Shown piece after piece: positions 3,909 through 59,306 of a DNA stretch of 64,000 nt. Every line of letters starts with the position of its first letter. Position 1 is the stretch's first letter. The translations under genes and the position numbers were made by a program. The notes beneath the pieces are model-generated. The model saw only the letters and a program-made list of their open reading frames with translations. It was not told the origin of the DNA and ran no database searches. The stretch lies in the sequence record PV754031.1; one strand, 5' to 3'.

Positions 3909-5231
3909 ATGACTAATAATTCACTTAGTCATTCGGTCTTACTTGAATCAATCGACGGGGACAGCCCCGTCGATATGATCGCTACATGCGATGGATATCT
4001 AAAAGAATTATTGCCATCAATTGAAGATATTCAAAGTAGATTAGAATGCACTGAAAAAGACATTTTAGTTAAAACCTATACCGATGGCTTATTTCAAAAA
4101 TATGCAGATAACCAAGATGTTGTTAGTGAACACATTCTAAAAACTGAGAATGTATCATTAGAAGATCTATCTAAGACAGCACGAAATACCTGGGATGAAA
4201 TGAAAAAATCCCAAGCAAAGCATCGAGATGAGTTAAAAGAGTATGCACGTGTTATTACACAAGGTAATCAACGTACTCTTGAACGAATAAACATGCTTTT
4301 AGAAAGAGCTGAAAATATTAAGCATGAGCCATTTAAGCAAGAATTAAAATTTAAAAATACTAAACGATTTAGTATTGATGGTAAATTCGAACCGACTACA
4401 GTTGATCCGATACTCATGCAAGTTAACAACTTGATAGCTTTCTATGATAAATCCCTACTCTTGTATATCCAATCTGTAGCTGATATCCTTAGGAAATTAT
4501 CATTTGATGAAAAATGGACTGATAGAGCTGCACAAGACTTTAGTAAGTTTAATGTTAAGAACTGGATGAAGGGTGCAGTACCTATTAAGAAAGATGATAG
4601 ATTTAGAGTAAGTTCTACAGTTTATCGTAGTATGCCAGTTCAAGGTAATAAAACTTTATTTGGCGCAGGGCCAACTGAAACACAGACTGAAGAGATCAGG
4701 GATTGGGATTTTTTAGTAAACACTGTCCGTGATTTTGCCTTTAAGTTTTATACTATTCCTACTATGAAGGATGCACCTGAAGGTAACAATACCTTTAAGG
4801 TTAATGATACGAGTTCAATTGGAAGACGGTTAGTATTATTAAGCGAAATGGCTAAACGTATAGATGCTAGAAAAGATTATGCAACTAAACTAGATTTTGA
4901 ATTTGGTAGGTTAATGCAGTTAGCCGAGACTAATCGTCAACAAGCTGGTAGGATTCGGGCACAACAATCTAATATGCGAAATCGTCAAGCAAAAGTTCAA
5001 GATCCGGATGCACCTGATGGCATCCCTGCTATCTCAAATATCATTAATTCAATTACATTAATGATCAATAATGTAAGTCGCGTTGTAACAGATTTTAGTA
5101 ATGCTCTTGCTGGTTTAGTCAGAGTAATGGGTCGACTAGTATTCGTGACCGAGTTAGAATTAAAAGCTTACCAGCGTCCAATTCAAAGACCTACGCAAGA
5201 ACAAGTAAATAATCCCTCCCAGGTAAGGTAA
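3909..5231 (+). CDS. Head protein, phiKZ gp92-like
   Basis: 440 aa; GAGGA SD; N-terminal LLESID and VSLEDL processing-type motifs. Confidence 0.65.
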   Translation: MTNNSLSHSVLLESIDGDSPVDMIATCDGYLKELLPSIEDIQSRLECTEKDILVKTYTDGLFQKYADNQDVVSEHILKTENVSLEDLSKTARNTWDEMKKSQAKHRDELKEYARVITQGNQRTLERINMLLERAENIKHEPFKQELKFKNTKRFSIDGKFEPTTVDPILMQVNNLIAFYDKSLLLYIQSVADILRKLSFDEKWTDRAAQDFSKFNVKNWMKGAVPIKKDDRFRVSSTVYRSMPVQGNKTLFGAGPTETQTEEIRDWDFLVNTVRDFAFKFYTIPTMKDAPEGNNTFKVNDTSSIGRRLVLLSEMAKRIDARKDYATKLDFEFGRLMQLAETNRQQAGRIRAQQSNMRNRQAKVQDPDAPDGIPAISNIINSITLMINNVSRVVTDFSNALAGLVRVMGRLVFVTELELKAYQRPIQRPTQEQVNNPSQVR

Positions 5232-31353: not shown

Positions 31354-33597
31354 ATGAGCGTACATGCCCTAAGAGAACTGTTTAAACACAAAGGCGAAAA
31401 GAAATACGAAGTCTTCTCAATGGAAGATTTCATTGGCCGCCTAGAAAGTGAAATTGGTCTAAATGACAGCATTGTTAGTCAAGGTCGTTCCCTTGTTAGC
31501 ACCATTTCACATGAAAACTTCGGTACCGTACAAGCTACCGACGTTCAAGATGCTGCTGCAATTTATAACAAAATGCAAATGCTCGTTAACGACTATGGTT
31601 TCGAACGAGTAAGTTCCAGTGATCCTCAAGTACGTGCTCGTGAAGAACGTGTTCGTGAGAACCAGATCACTGCTGCTACCATGGCTGCTATCGCCTGTGC
31701 TGATGAAACTAAATATATCCGTGCACTACGTGGTATTACCAAAGCTAAAGCTTCTAACGAAGATCATGTTAAGGTTGTACAGCATCAGTTCAATGGCCCT
31801 GCTGGTGGCATTCAAGTATTCGAAAATGGTGTTGGCCTAGAGAACTATAACGAGAAGTCACAGCGTGATTTCCGTGTTGTAACTATTGGTTATAACCTAG
31901 CTGCTAGCCGTCAGGATGAATTCGCTGAGCGTATCTATCCGACCACCGTTATCAACCCGATTGAAGGTGGTGTTGTTCAGGTTCTTCCTTACATCGCTGT
32001 AATGAAAGACGTTTACCACGAAGTATCCGGCGTTAAGATGGATAACGAAGAAGTGAACATGGTAGAAGCCTATCGTGATCCTTCCATCCTCGACGACGAA
32101 AGCATTGCACTAATTCCTGCCCTAGATCCGGCTGGTTCCAATGCTGACTTCTTCGTAGACCCGGCTCTTGTTCCTCCGTACACCATCAAGAACGAGCAGA
32201 ACCTAACTATCACTACTGCTCCGCTAAAAGCGAACGTACGTCTTGATCTAATGGGTAACTCCAATGCTAACCTACTCATTCAGCGTGGCATGCTTGAAGT
32301 TTCTGACACCATTGATCCGGCTGGTCGTCTAAAGAACCTATTCGTTCTACTCGGCGGTAAAGTTGTTAAGTTCAAGGTTGACCGTCTACCTCGCGCTGTG
32401 TTCCAGCCCGATCTAGTTGGTGATACCCGGAACGCAGTTATCCGTTTCGATAGCGATGACCTTGTTGTTAGTGGCGATACCACTTTCATCGACGGTTCAG
32501 CTGATGGCGTTATTAACGACCTTAAGACTGCTAAACTAAGCCTACGTCTAAGCGTTGGTTTTGGTGGTACTATCAGCCTATCCAAAGGCGATTCTAAGTT
32601 TGGTGCTACCGACACTTACGTCGATAAAGTTCTAAACGAAGATGGCCAGGTAATGGATAATGCTGACCCGGCTGTTAAAGCTATTCTAGATCAGCTAACT
32701 GACCTAGCTGTTATCGGTTTCGAACTAGATACTCGCTTCACCAACACTAACCGTCGTCAGCGTGGTCACCTACTACAGACCCGTGCACTACAGTTCCGTC
32801 ATCCGATCCCGATGCACGCTCCTGTAACTCTACCGATGGACACCATGACCGATGAAGGTCCGGGTGAGGTTGTTAAAGCTCTAACTGTTAACACCAACAT
32901 CCGTAACAGCAACAACGCTGTTAAGCGCATGCTTAACTACCTTGCTCAACTACGTGAAGTTGTACACAATGGTTACAACCGTCCGAAGTTTGGTATCATC
33001 GAAGGTGCACTATCCGCTGTAATGCGTCCGACCTATCGTTACAAAGAACTAGATCTTGAGAAAGTCATCGACACCATCAAGTCTAAAGATCGTTGGGACG
33101 ACGTTTGCGCTGCGATCCTAAACTGTGTTAAAGCTGAGCTATTCCCGGCTCACCGTGATTCCAACATTGAAGCTGCCTTCCGTGTTATCTCCGGTAACCA
33201 GGATGAAACTCCGATGTATCTCTTCTGCTCCGACAAAGAGATTGCTAACTATCTAATGACTAAAGGTGACGACCGTACTCTAGGTGCTTATCTCAAGTAC
33301 GATATCGTTTCCACCAACAACCAGCTATTTGATGGTAAGCTAGTTGTAATTCCGACCCGCGCAGTACAACAAGAAAATGACATCCTCTCCTGGGGCCAGT
33401 TCTTCTACGTATCTACTGTTATCGCTGACCTACCGATCACTCGTGGTGGTCACCAGGTTACTCGCGAAATCGCGGCCATTCCGTTCAACCTACACGTCAA
33501 CAACATTCCGTTCGCGCTAGAGTTCAAGATCACTGGCTTCCAGAAAGTCATGGGCGAAACTCAGTTCAACGGTAAGCTTGCTGATCTTAAGCCGTGA
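31354..33597 (+). CDS. gp120: Major capsid protein, phiKZ gp120 homolog
   Basis: 747 aa; strongly biased high-expression codons; propeptide with FSMED/ISHEN/VGLENY sites; ends in TGA. Confidence 0.95.
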   Translation: MSVHALRELFKHKGEKKYEVFSMEDFIGRLESEIGLNDSIVSQGRSLVSTISHENFGTVQATDVQDAAAIYNKMQMLVNDYGFERVSSSDPQVRAREERVRENQITAATMAAIACADETKYIRALRGITKAKASNEDHVKVVQHQFNGPAGGIQVFENGVGLENYNEKSQRDFRVVTIGYNLAASRQDEFAERIYPTTVINPIEGGVVQVLPYIAVMKDVYHEVSGVKMDNEEVNMVEAYRDPSILDDESIALIPALDPAGSNADFFVDPALVPPYTIKNEQNLTITTAPLKANVRLDLMGNSNANLLIQRGMLEVSDTIDPAGRLKNLFVLLGGKVVKFKVDRLPRAVFQPDLVGDTRNAVIRFDSDDLVVSGDTTFIDGSADGVINDLKTAKLSLRLSVGFGGTISLSKGDSKFGATDTYVDKVLNEDGQVMDNADPAVKAILDQLTDLAVIGFELDTRFTNTNRRQRGHLLQTRALQFRHPIPMHAPVTLPMDTMTDEGPGEVVKALTVNTNIRNSNNAVKRMLNYLAQLREVVHNGYNRPKFGIIEGALSAVMRPTYRYKELDLEKVIDTIKSKDRWDDVCAAILNCVKAELFPAHRDSNIEAAFRVISGNQDETPMYLFCSDKEIANYLMTKGDDRTLGAYLKYDIVSTNNQLFDGKLVVIPTRAVQQENDILSWGQFFYVSTVIADLPITRGGHQVTREIAAIPFNLHVNNIPFALEFKITGFQKVMGETQFNGKLADLKP

Positions 33598-33678
33598 GCT
33601 GGAAAGGGTTACCGTTATCTAGAAAATGGGACTATCCGTTATTTGGAAGACGGTAATGCCCGGAAGTTAGAAGAGTAA
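33598..33678 (+). other. In-frame post-stop extension of the capsid gene (candidate UGA read-through tail, 26 sense codons)
   Basis: TGA-GCT GGA AAG GGT TAC CGT TAT CTA GAA AAT GGG ... GAA GAG TAA = AGKGYRYLENGTIRYLEDGNARKLEE; no SD/start of its own; ends before the terminator. Confidence 0.6.
33613..33642 (+). repeat. 30-nt exact direct repeat, copy 1 (CGTTATCTAGAAAATGGGACTATCCGTTAT)
   Basis: Identical to 59265-59294. Confidence 0.95.
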
Positions 33679-33687
33679 CAGACATAG

Positions 33688-33707
33688 GCCCTCCCTTCGG
33701 GGAGGGC
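33688..33707 (+). terminator. Hairpin GCCCTCCC-TTCG-GGGAGGGC plus TTTATG
   Basis: 8-bp stem with UUCG loop; capsid operon end. Confidence 0.9.
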
Positions 33708-33734
33708 TTTATGTTGTATTACATTAAAAAAAGT

Positions 33735-33751
33735 TTAAGATCTATATTACA
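33735..33751 (+). promoter_or_regulatory. phiKZ-type early promoter (TATATTAC at 33743-33750)
   Basis: TTAAGATCTATATTACA; same spacing of TTAA and core as the 19952/21140 copies. Confidence 0.75.
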
Positions 33752-33793
33752 GTAATGATCATGATCTTCTAATTTAAAAATAGGTTAATCCAA

Positions 33794-34246
33794 ATGAACG
33801 TTCAATTATTTCCAGAAGTCATCGAAAGATGGCAAGATGCCCTAAGGGTATCTCTTATAGAAAAAAATACCATGGTAGATAATAAGATGTCTACCGTAGA
33901 TGATGATAAATACATTAATACTTTCTTTGAAGAATTCCATCCTGTTCAGGATGCCTTTATGCCCAAAGGGCTAGAGGACTTTATTACTGATTATGCCAAG
34001 AAAAACATTGAGGAGATCCTTCAAGAAAAACAGTTTAAGCGGGCCACCGAAAAGTTATATTGTTCGAGTGACCCGCATAAATGGCAGAAATCAAGTAATA
34101 AGGAAAAGAGTGAATCCTTTAAGGGAAGGTCCGTACATCAAACTAAAAAGAGGCTCCCCAACATTGTAGATTTGGAGGCCGTTGTGATTAAGGTAGATTT
34201 CAATGGTAACACTAAAAATTGCGGGGCTTACTCAAGTATCAGTTAA
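33794..34246 (+). CDS. Hypothetical protein (gp121-like, 150 aa)
   Basis: AAATAGG leader after early promoter. Confidence 0.65.
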   Translation: MNVQLFPEVIERWQDALRVSLIEKNTMVDNKMSTVDDDKYINTFFEEFHPVQDAFMPKGLEDFITDYAKKNIEEILQEKQFKRATEKLYCSSDPHKWQKSSNKEKSESFKGRSVHQTKKRLPNIVDLEAVVIKVDFNGNTKNCGAYSSIS

Positions 34247-58772: not shown

Positions 58773-59306
58773 ATGCAGGATATCTTTCCGTATGACATGG
58801 CATCGAGGGACGCGCTAGTAAAACTTGCGCGGGATGATTTAAAAATAAACTTCAAACCAGAAACAGTTACATTTGAAGATATGTTTTTTAGTCCAACCAC
58901 GATTGAGCCTGGACGTACATTTATTGAAATGATCGACATTACTACTGACATTAAGTACATGTTAACTTACCGTCGGTTAGATTTTGCTGATCCACGAGCT
59001 ATTGGTGAAGGATCTATCCTTAAGATAGTTGGTACTTTAACACCTAAAGCAATTGCTGAAGAAATCAACCGTTCACGGGGTTGGAAGCTTGGACCAGATG
59101 ATGTTTCATTTGATACAACACCAATCAATGCAACTACGGATGTTGTTCCATACACGATAGTAGCTATGTCGAGTAGTTATGCTTACTATGGTGAATGTAA
59201 TATACTAATTCAACGTATTGATGATACATCGGATACTATCCGGCTATTAGAGAATGGCGCAGCACGTTATCTAGAAAATGGGACTATCCGTTATCTAGAA
59301 AGTTAA
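58773..59306 (+). CDS. Virion structural protein (gp143-like, 177 aa) ending in RLLENG-x2-RYLENG-x2-RYLES repeat
   Basis: GAGG SD; domain shared with gp126/gp127-like; C-terminal repeat. Confidence 0.7.
   Translation: MQDIFPYDMASRDALVKLARDDLKINFKPETVTFEDMFFSPTTIEPGRTFIEMIDITTDIKYMLTYRRLDFADPRAIGEGSILKIVGTLTPKAIAEEINRSRGWKLGPDDVSFDTTPINATTDVVPYTIVAMSSSYAYYGECNILIQRIDDTSDTIRLLENGAARYLENGTIRYLES
59265..59294 (+). repeat. 30-nt exact direct repeat, copy 2
   Basis: Identical to 33613-33642. Confidence 0.95.

What the first reader, a model, noticed from the sequence alone, without database searches (positions are those of the whole stretch)
33592..33707. Major capsid protein appears to have a programmed UGA read-through tail
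Seen: the capsid gene ends CCG TGA G, and the same frame stays open for 26 more codons (AGKGYRYLENGTIRYLEDGNARKLEE) to TAA at 33676-33678. Only after that comes the operon terminator (33688-33707). Other late genes here put the terminator about 10-20 nt after the stop; the capsid gene has a 90-nt gap. The tail is a non-random triple repeat (R-x-L-E-[ND]-G-x-x), has no SD or start of its own, and follows a TGA although most highly expressed structural genes here use TAA. Established: UGA is the leakiest bacterial stop, and recoded minor capsid variants exist (Q-beta A1 read-through, T7 gp10B frameshift). Inference: a small fraction of capsomers (774-codon product) display a peptide tag, with stoichiometry set by read-through. 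I do not recall this being described for phiKZ-like phages.
Basis: partly seen in the sequence, partly recalled or inferred. Interest (0 to 1): 0.9.

Follow-up and report, generated by a model that had tools for sequence, protein, structure and literature searches.

The report
Conserved read-through tail on phiKZ capsid protein
The major capsid gene of phiKZ-like Pseudomonas phages ends in a TGA stop followed by a short in-frame coding stretch that relatives conserve as protein. A small share of capsid subunits therefore probably carries a 26-residue tail copied from the end of tail proteins, which nobody seems to have described.

Summary
The capsid ORF (31354-33597) ends in TGA. Twenty-six in-frame codons follow to TAA at 33676-33678, and the terminator hairpin starts 7 nt later.

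- Among 51 distinct capsid 3' ends from relatives (58-100 % identity), 27 have TGA plus a 24-30-codon extension with the same triple repeat.
- 21 have no extension, and all of these end in TAA.
- Indels come in whole codons, and Arg and Gly codons interchange synonymously.
- The other two frames are closed in most sequences.
- Within-clade pN/pS of the extension is 0.43-0.52.
- None of 120 database homologues has the tail fused through a sense codon.

The tail matches the true C-terminus of virion protein gp143 (58773-59306; hhalign probability 97.7 %). The same end-piece closes many phage tail proteins.

No suppressor tRNA, conserved SECIS-like hairpin or conserved start codon was found.

Best reading: leaky UGA read-through makes a minor 774-residue capsid isoform. 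Translation itself is not shown, and the function of the tail is unknown. There are three exceptions: two TAA stops followed by the motif, and one TGA followed by an Ig-like ORF. I found no description in the literature. I rate it a new variant of a known kind, with high interest.

The parts
31354..33597 (+). Major capsid protein gene (phiKZ gp120 orthologue), 747 codons plus TGA
   Evidence: ORF list. Pfam PhiKZ_MCP, E 5e-228. PDB 8y6v gp120, E 0. Annotation of NC_004629.
33595..33597 (+). TGA stop proposed to be leaky (context CCG TGA G)
   Evidence: TGA is kept in all 27 relatives that carry the short extension.
33598..33675 (+). 26-codon in-frame extension: a linker of about 5 residues, then three R-x-x-E units with D/N-G turns
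   Evidence: coding signature. (hhalign 97.7 % to gp143 C-termini).
33676..33678 (+). TAA, proposed true end of the extended isoform
   Evidence: In relatives the second stop falls 20-22 residues after the first Arg of the motif, as in authentic C-termini that carry the module.
33686..33709 (+). Intrinsic terminator hairpin with T-rich tail
   Evidence: A hairpin follows the second stop in all 22 relatives examined.
33599..33665 (+). Predicted RNA hairpin inside the extension, strong in this genome only; a possible by-product of Arg (CGN) and Asp-Gly (GAC GGN) codons being complementary
   Evidence: -29.6 kcal/mol, z -3.3. (consensus of 19 relatives only -2.4 kcal/mol).
58773..59306 (+). gp143 orthologue, a virion structural protein of 177 aa whose C-terminus carries the same module
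   Evidence: phrog_2935, E 2e-45; annotation.
59241..59303 (+). C-terminal module of gp143; 30 nt (59265-59294) are identical to capsid tail 33613-33642

Best explanation
Proposed mechanism. Host ribosomes usually terminate at the TGA of the capsid gene. In a minority of rounds a near-cognate tRNA (most likely tRNA-Trp; inferred) decodes it. Translation then continues for 26 codons to the TAA just ahead of the terminator.

Product. This gives a minor 774-residue isoform of the major capsid protein. Its extra tail is a short linker plus a three-unit R-x-x-E-[D/N]-G module. That module is homologous to the C-terminal end-piece of virion protein gp143 and of many phage tail proteins.

Why sub-stoichiometric. 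All six C-termini of a hexamer meet in one six-helix bundure around a pore of about 9 A (PMC11297242). A tail on every subunit would crowd there. A leaky stop gives a low dose, so a few subunits per capsid carry the module, probably on the outer face.

What the module does is not known. My leading guess is a docking or strand-pairing peptide.

Shown: the anatomy, the conservation as protein-coding sequence, the link between TGA and the extension, and the homology to gp143. Inferred: that read-through happens, its rate, which residue is inserted, and the location and role of the tail.
For: 1. TGA plus an open frame in seven named genera: Phikzvirus, Miltoncavirus, Pawinskivirus, Phabiovirus, Serwervirus, Tepukevirus and Noxifervirus.
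2. Among 51 distinct 3' ends, 27 have TGA plus the motif extension and 21 have TAA with no extension. Fisher p = 5e-10, not corrected for phylogeny.
3. Extension-less TAA forms lie nested among TGA-plus-extension relatives: L047 next to Psa21, and L056 and L039 inside the Noxifer group.
4. Coding signature. All indels are whole codons. Conserved Arg columns use CGT, CGA, CGC, CGG, AGG and AGA. Conserved Gly columns use all four GGN codons. Frame +1 has stops in 25 of 27 extensions and frame +2 in 23 of 27.
5. pN/pS is 0.61 in frame 0 against 0.86 and 1.07 in the other frames. Within clades the extension gives 0.43-0.52 and the capsid body 0.10-0.22.
6. The terminator follows the second stop in all 22 relatives checked.
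7. None of 120 capsid homologues from a 5.8-billion-protein set ends with the motif.
8. Profile-profile match of the capsid tails to gp143 C-termini: probability 97.7 %, E 2e-12, same register to the C-terminus. In the whole phiKZ genome the double motif occurs only at these two places.
9. The module is a real protein end elsewhere. A DNA pattern scan gave 87 hits against about 3 expected by my estimate. 67 of them lie within 26 residues of the frame end, on tail proteins.
10. phiKZ encodes no suppressor, Trp or Sec tRNA.
11. No start codon is conserved in any frame.
Against: - There is no direct evidence of translation. No peptide, ribosome footprint or extra band is reported in the papers I could search.
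- The cryo-EM model stops at residue 747 and mentions no extra density at hexamer centres.
- Two relatives carry the motif after TAA: L081, and L036 with an Ig-like domain in front. TAA is a poor read-through codon, so these are either decaying copies or a sign of some other mechanism.
- The extension evolves faster than the capsid body.
- The association statistic ignores shared ancestry; I count only about five independent losses.
- The read-through rate in Pseudomonas in this context is unknown.
Confidence: 0.72

Rival explanations
1. The stretch after the TGA is not translated. It is conserved as a cis-acting RNA or DNA element of the capsid 3' UTR, for example a stabilising hairpin, a processing site or a source of a small RNA.
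For: In this genome the region folds into a strong hairpin (-29.6 kcal/mol, z -3.3). The block after the terminator is also conserved across genera, so non-coding conservation does exist at this locus.
Against: - The consensus fold of 19 relatives is weak (-2.4 kcal/mol, 7 pairs, almost no compensatory change).
- Arg CGN-to-AGG changes keep the residue but break the pairs.
- Whole-codon indels, four-fold variation at Gly third positions and a single open frame are not expected of an RNA element.
- The peptide is homologous to real protein C-termini.
- Rfam gives nothing near threshold.
Confidence: 0.08
2. The extension is a silent relic. An ancestor had the module fused to the capsid protein, a nonsense change cut it off, and what remains is slowly decaying.
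For: - Extension-less lineages exist, so the tail is dispensable in some phages.
- L081 has TAA with a slightly degenerate motif.
- The extension evolves faster than the capsid body.
Against: - The frame and the key residues persist across lineages whose synonymous sites are near saturation (pS 0.66).
- There are no in-frame stops or frameshifts in 27 sequences.
- The TGA never changed to TAA while the tail was kept, in 27 of 29 cases.
- No lineage has the supposed ancestral sense-codon fusion.
Confidence: 0.06
3. The TGA encodes selenocysteine, directed by a downstream SECIS-like hairpin and the host Sel machinery.
For: There is a UGA followed closely by a hairpin in this genome. Some Pseudomonas species make selenoproteins (own knowledge).
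Against: - The hairpin is not conserved in sequence or in pairing.
- There is no Rfam match.
- The phage has no tRNA-Sec.
- The base after the TGA and the first extension codons vary freely.
- The residue would sit in a linker with no evident redox role.
Confidence: 0.02
4. The 26 codons are translated on their own as a free small peptide, through re-initiation after termination or from an unusual start.
For: A purine-rich GGAAAGGG stretch follows the TGA in several genera. In the uncultured relative L031 an ATG lies two codons after the TGA, ahead of an Ig-like ORF.
Against: - 12 of 20 extensions have no in-frame ATG, GTG or TTG at all, and those that occur are at different places.
- No start follows the purine-rich stretch at a usable distance in the window.
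- Wherever else the module is found it is the end of a larger protein.
Confidence: 0.04

Closest known systems
Q-beta A1 (read-through) protein of ssRNA coliphages
   Different: - Here the phage is a dsDNA jumbo phage with an HK97-fold capsid.
- The extension is 26 residues, not a whole domain.
- There is no sequence relation: Pfam and PHROGs give no such hit.
- The product has not been demonstrated.
T7 capsid protein 10A/10B, and the frameshift-appended ends of Listeria phage capsid and tail proteins
   Same: A dsDNA phage makes a minor capsid isoform with an alternative C-terminus by recoding near the end of the gene (own knowledge; PMC5009743 reviews such cases).
   Different: Those use -1 or +1 frameshifting into another frame. 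Here the extension is in frame 0 behind a stop, and the other frames are closed.
Ig-like domains added to phage structural proteins by recoding
   Same: An optional surface module at the C-terminus of a structural protein, made in sub-stoichiometric amounts. Two uncultured relatives have a Big_2 domain in exactly this position behind the capsid stop (L031, L036).
   Different: The window's tail has no Ig-like domain. It is only the short repeat module, which in L036 follows the Ig-like domain.
C-terminal R-x-x-E-D-G repeat end-piece of phage tail and virion proteins (gp143 / phrog_2935; Phage-tail_3 and Tail_P2_I proteins)
   Same: The same three-unit repeat, the same distance to the stop, and a profile match of 97.7 %.
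   Different: In those proteins the module is part of the ordinary reading frame. Here it lies behind a stop codon of the capsid gene. The library searches I ran (Pfam, PHROGs, solved structures) returned no function for the module.

Membership tests
Programmed stop-codon read-through giving a minor capsid isoform (Q-beta A1 type) | Leaky stop (UGA) ends the major capsid gene | tested here: met
   TGA at 33595-33597. TGA in 27 of 29 motif-bearing relatives.
Programmed stop-codon read-through giving a minor capsid isoform (Q-beta A1 type) | Downstream frame conserved as protein-coding sequence | tested here: met
   Whole-codon indels, synonymous codon turnover at conserved Arg, Glu and Gly columns, pN/pS 0.43-0.61, other frames closed.
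Programmed stop-codon read-through giving a minor capsid isoform (Q-beta A1 type) | Extended protein present in infected cells or virions | not testable with these tools
   No proteomic or ribosome-profiling data are available here, and the papers searched do not report it.
Programmed stop-codon read-through giving a minor capsid isoform (Q-beta A1 type) | Sequence homology to the Q-beta A1 extension | tested here: not met
   The tail gives no Pfam family, and in PHROGs only the gp143 family. This is an analogue, not a relative.
Frameshift-generated capsid isoform (T7 10B type) | Extension lies in the -1 or +1 frame and is reached at a slippery site | tested here: not met
   The extension is in frame 0. 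Frames +1 and +2 carry stops in 25 and 23 of 27 sequences.
Bacterial selenoprotein gene | Conserved SECIS hairpin just downstream of the UGA | tested here: not met
   Consensus fold -2.4 kcal/mol without covariation. No Rfam match.
Suppressor-tRNA-dependent decoding | Phage-encoded tRNA that reads UGA | tested here: not met
   ARAGORN on the whole phiKZ genome finds Thr, Asn x2, Asp, Met, Pro and Leu only. There are none in the window.
C-terminal R-x-x-E-D-G repeat end-piece (gp143 / phrog_2935 and tail proteins) | Three repeat units with Arg, Glu and Gly at fixed spacing | tested here: met
   Capsid tails: Arg, Glu and Gly of unit 1 and Gly of unit 2 are invariant in 20 of 20; Arg and Glu of unit 2 are in at least 90 %. 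In 42 gp143 homologues R157, E160, G162, R165, E168, G170 and R173 are invariant.
C-terminal R-x-x-E-D-G repeat end-piece (gp143 / phrog_2935 and tail proteins) | The module sits at the very end: a stop 19-24 residues after the first Arg | tested here: met
   Capsid tails show 20-22 residues. 67 of 87 pattern hits lie within 26 residues of the frame end.
C-terminal R-x-x-E-D-G repeat end-piece (gp143 / phrog_2935 and tail proteins) | Profile-level similarity | tested here: met
   hhalign probability 97.7 %, E 2e-12, 25 columns. The single-sequence PHROG hit is only E 0.083.
Ig-like (Big_2) capsid decoration appended by recoding | Ig-like domain in the extension | tested here: not met
   No Pfam hit for the window tail. 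Big_2 appears only in L031 (E 4e-9) and L036 (E 5e-7).
PhiKZ_MCP (PF25620) | Full-length match of the upstream ORF | tested here: met
   E 5e-228, profile positions 1-635.

The most novel reading that the evidence does not exclude
The recoded tail is a docking peptide. By copying the C-terminal end-piece that gp143 and many tail proteins carry, a few capsid subunits per head would recruit the same, still unidentified partner that this end-piece binds on the tail (for example a fibre or adhesin), or would pair with gp143 itself. The leaky UGA would act as the dosing device, because six tails cannot fit at one hexamer centre. Appending this module by recoding may also be recurrent. In an unrelated contig (L148) the module lies in the -1 frame, without a start, over the end of a small FN3-like ORF at a run of G.
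Probability: 0.15. Interest if true: 0.85.

Novelty: new variant of a known kind. Interest (0 to 1): 0.75.

Why it matters
- phiKZ is the model nucleus-forming jumbo phage. Its capsid and whole virion have been solved by cryo-EM and its genome screened by transposon and antisense methods. Even so, the papers I could search describe no recoding event in its most abundant gene.
- If confirmed, this would be, to my knowledge, the first stop-codon read-through isoform of a major capsid protein in a tailed dsDNA phage.
- It would add a component to the virion parts list that symmetry-averaged maps cannot see.
- It would draw attention to a widespread short C-terminal module of phage tail proteins whose role is unknown.
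- It also bears on annotation (intervals after a TGA stop that have been treated as 3' UTR) and on capsid display engineering, since nature appears to tolerate a low-copy C-terminal tag at this site.

Tried and rejected
- An alternative-frame small ORF starting at the ATG inside the first E-[D/N]-G codons. It looked conserved in the first five genera, but many relatives use GAC there and that frame carries stops. Rejected.
- A conserved start codon inside the extension: none.
- RNA family search: only sub-threshold noise.
- Pfam on the tail alone: nothing.
- Distant nucleus-forming phages (LucasX, RAY, DT01, RP31) have other, low-complexity C-termini and no motif, so the feature is limited to the Pseudomonas phiKZ clade and its uncultured relatives.
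- A search for a sense-codon fusion among 120 homologues: none.
- gp143 in the PDB by sequence: absent, apart from a weak hit to a 'Triplex 2 protein' (E 0.023). By fold, the only match is a chain of the phiKZ outer baseplate entry 9xqd. This hints at a tail location but does not explain the module.
- Co-occurrence test: gp143 homologues keep the module even at 32-40 % identity to the window protein. I did not match these distant homologues to genomes whose capsid lacks the extension, so whether the two copies depend on each other stays untested.
- Literature searches for read-through, stop codon, ribosome profiling or proteogenomics in phiKZ found nothing on this locus.
- The search for related loci with gp143 as a single protein found only two loci, so tblastn was used instead.

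Slip to disclose: in my private reasoning I wrote from memory a short peptide of the phage T4 fibritin foldon and a few half-remembered repeat fragments as leads. The DNA pattern was derived from the window's own motif.
Full report
**What is there**

The window is a phiKZ-like Pseudomonas phage. Over the 501-nt query (33300-33800) it is 100 % identical to phage Bobae and 99.8 % to phiKZ. Gene coordinates match the phiKZ annotation up to the capsid gene.

The capsid ORF runs from 31354 to 33597 and ends CCG TGA. The same frame then stays open for 26 codons to TAA at 33676-33678. The strongest terminator-like hairpin of the neighbourhood lies at 33686-33709.

Five other genes in the window have their hairpin 9-20 nt after the stop. 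The capsid gene has it 88 nt after the TGA but 7 nt after the TAA. Stop usage among 54 annotated genes is 40 TAA, 9 TGA and 5 TAG.

**Is it more than chance?**

One open 26-codon stretch in one genome would not be. The relatives decide the matter.

A blastn search showed that the DNA past the stop still aligns at about 70 % identity in other genera. In the alignment of five genera the TGA is invariant and all gaps are multiples of three. Reading each genome as it stands, Phikzvirus, Miltoncavirus, Pawinskivirus, Phabiovirus, Serwervirus, Tepukevirus and Noxifervirus all have TGA followed by 26-30 open codons with the same repeat. More distant nucleus-forming phages do not.

I added loci from three sources: IMG/VR, metagenomes and contigs that encode database homologues. 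This gave 51 distinct 3' ends:

| Stop | What follows | Count |
|---|---|---|
| TGA | motif extension of 24-30 codons | 27 |
| TAA | nothing; the terminator follows at once | 21 |
| TAA | motif (L081; L036 with an Ig-like domain in front) | 2 |
| TGA | Ig-like ORF (L031) | 1 |

Fisher's test gives p = 5e-10, but this ignores ancestry. On a neighbour-joining tree the extension-less TAA forms are nested among TGA-plus-extension forms at several places: L047 beside Psa21, and L056 and L039 within the Noxifer group. In L047 the remnant of the extension's end is still visible in a shifted frame.

**Coding signature**

- In the codon alignment of 22 extensions, the conserved Arg columns use CGT, CGA, CGC, CGG, AGG and AGA.
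- The conserved Gly columns use all four GGN codons, Glu uses GAA and GAG, and Asp uses GAT and GAC.
- Pooled pN/pS is 0.61 in frame 0, against 0.86 and 1.07 when the same alignment is read in the other frames.
- Within four clades the extension gives 0.43-0.52, against 0.10-0.22 for the last 200 capsid codons.
- Frames +1 and +2 contain stops in 25 and 23 of 27 extensions.
- No start codon is conserved.
- An ATG in another frame looked conserved at first, but it disappears in relatives that use GAC.
- In all 22 relatives examined the terminator follows the second stop, not the first.

**Mechanisms considered**

- Suppressor tRNA: phiKZ encodes seven tRNAs (Thr, Asn x2, Asp, Met, Pro, Leu). 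None reads UGA.
- RNA structure: the window's extension folds into a strong hairpin, but the consensus fold of 19 relatives is weak and lacks covariation. Arg codon switches keep the residue while breaking pairs. Rfam finds nothing. A conserved SECIS element or read-through-stimulating structure is therefore not supported, although a local hairpin could still help in individual genomes.
- Context of the stop: the base after the TGA is A in 18 cases, G in 7, C in 1 and T in none. The last sense codon is Pro in 12 of 26, and Pro is also common in extension-less relatives.
- From general knowledge of E. coli, UGA is the leakiest stop, a following T gives the strongest termination, and a C-terminal Pro slows termination. 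I did not test these points for Pseudomonas.

**Why a leaky stop rather than a fusion?**

None of 120 capsid homologues from the large protein collection ends with the motif. The published capsid structure models gp120 to residue 747. It shows the six C-terminal arms of each hexamer forming one six-helix bundle around a pore of about 9 A, while in pentamers the arms bind the outer decoration protein gp244 (PMC11297242). Six 26-residue tails at one point would be crowded. A low dose avoids that. This step is inference.

**What the tail is**

- A six-frame scan found the double motif at only one other place in the window, and in the whole phiKZ genome: the C-terminus of the 177-residue ORF at 58773-59306, which is gp143.
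- gp143 belongs to phrog_2935, 'virion structural protein'. Its 201phi2-1 orthologue is annotated as detected in virions by mass spectrometry.
- Thirty nucleotides are identical between the two loci in the window, which suggests exchange between them.
- gp143 homologues occur in 69 phage records, all from Pseudomonas phages. That is the same number as the records that match the capsid tail region by DNA.
- Their C-termini keep the three-unit module, with Arg, Glu and Gly invariant.
- A profile of 20 capsid tails matches a profile of 8 gp143 ends with probability 97.7 % and E 2e-12. The two are aligned in the same register up to the C-terminus.

A DNA pattern derived from the motif found 87 places in IMG/VR, where I estimate about three by chance. 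67 of them lie within 26 residues of the end of their reading frame. The carriers that could be named are tail proteins: phrog_1101, 6284, 21247, 4271, 48 and 6305, and Pfam Phage-tail_3 and Tail_P2_I. The capsid tail is therefore a copy of a widespread C-terminal end-piece of phage tail proteins. It ends at the same distance from the motif as authentic protein ends do.

An AlphaFold model of gp143 is confident for the core (mean pLDDT 88.8). It is less confident for the module (68-80), where it shows three short strand-bridge pairs. The only fold match is a chain of the phiKZ outer baseplate entry 9xqd. The structural atlas paper does not mention gp143. The function of the module remains open.

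**Literature**

Searches for read-through, stop codon, ribosome profiling and proteogenomics together with phiKZ found no description of this feature. The capsid structure paper, the virion atlas, the transposon screen and the 201phi2-1 transcriptome paper do not mention it.

**Verdict**

The interpretation, a programmed low-level UGA read-through that makes a minor tailed capsid isoform, is the best-supported explanation. I put it at about 0.72.

The main reservation is that all the evidence is evolutionary. Two TAA-bearing exceptions and the unknown function also remain. In kind it resembles the Q-beta A1 protein and the recoded capsid isoforms of T7 and Listeria phages, but it is related to none of them. 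I rate it a new variant of a known kind, and of high interest to phage specialists.

Noticed in passing
window 58773-59306 (module 59241-59303): gp143, a virion structural protein that the cryo-EM atlas does not mention, ends with the same three-unit repeat as the capsid tail. 30 nt (59265-59294) are identical to 33613-33642. In reference phiKZ one residue of that stretch differs.
   Followed up: yes
L031:2428-3042: In this uncultured relative the capsid gene ends in TGA. The same frame then continues for 203 codons that encode a Big_2 Ig-like domain. An ATG lies two codons after the TGA, so this is either a separate gene or read-through.
   Followed up: partly
L036:2443-2733 (same contig as L139): The capsid gene ends in TAA and is followed in frame by 95 codons: a Big_2 domain that begins at the first codon, then the repeat module, then a terminator. 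There is no convincing start codon. It could be TAA read-through, another mechanism or an assembly error.
   Followed up: partly
L081:2742-2822: TAA (next base C) is followed by a 25-codon extension that carries a slightly degenerate motif. This is an exception to the link between TGA and the extension, and may be a recently silenced copy.
   Followed up: no
L148:3738-4206: In an unrelated 62-kb viral contig the module lies in a 34-codon frame that has no usable start codon (its only start-type codon is a TTG at codon 31). The frame overlaps, in the -1 frame, the end of a 131-residue ORF that looks FN3-like by eye, at a run of G just upstream of a 441-residue ORF. The module may be appended here by frameshifting.
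   Followed up: partly
window 33707-33760: The block after the terminator (an A-run followed by a TCTATATTAC-like stretch) is conserved across five genera. It resembles what I recall as the phiKZ early-promoter motif, upstream of gp121.
   Followed up: no
window 4198-4740: gp91 ends in TGA and the gp92 start codon lies 9 nt downstream in the same frame. This is probably chance.
   Followed up: no
capsid homologues P0001-P0120 and loci L012-L083: Most capsid proteins of this clade end in Pro directly before the stop (31 of 49 distinct ends with a short motif extension after TGA, or with none), whether or not an extension follows. Several aquatic relatives end in Thr/Pro/Glu-rich linker-like tails with nothing behind them.
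   Followed up: no
window 33680-33715 and the matching sites in L012-L042: The capsid terminators share an extended stem in which CATA and TATG flank the G+C-rich hairpin, across genera.
   Followed up: no
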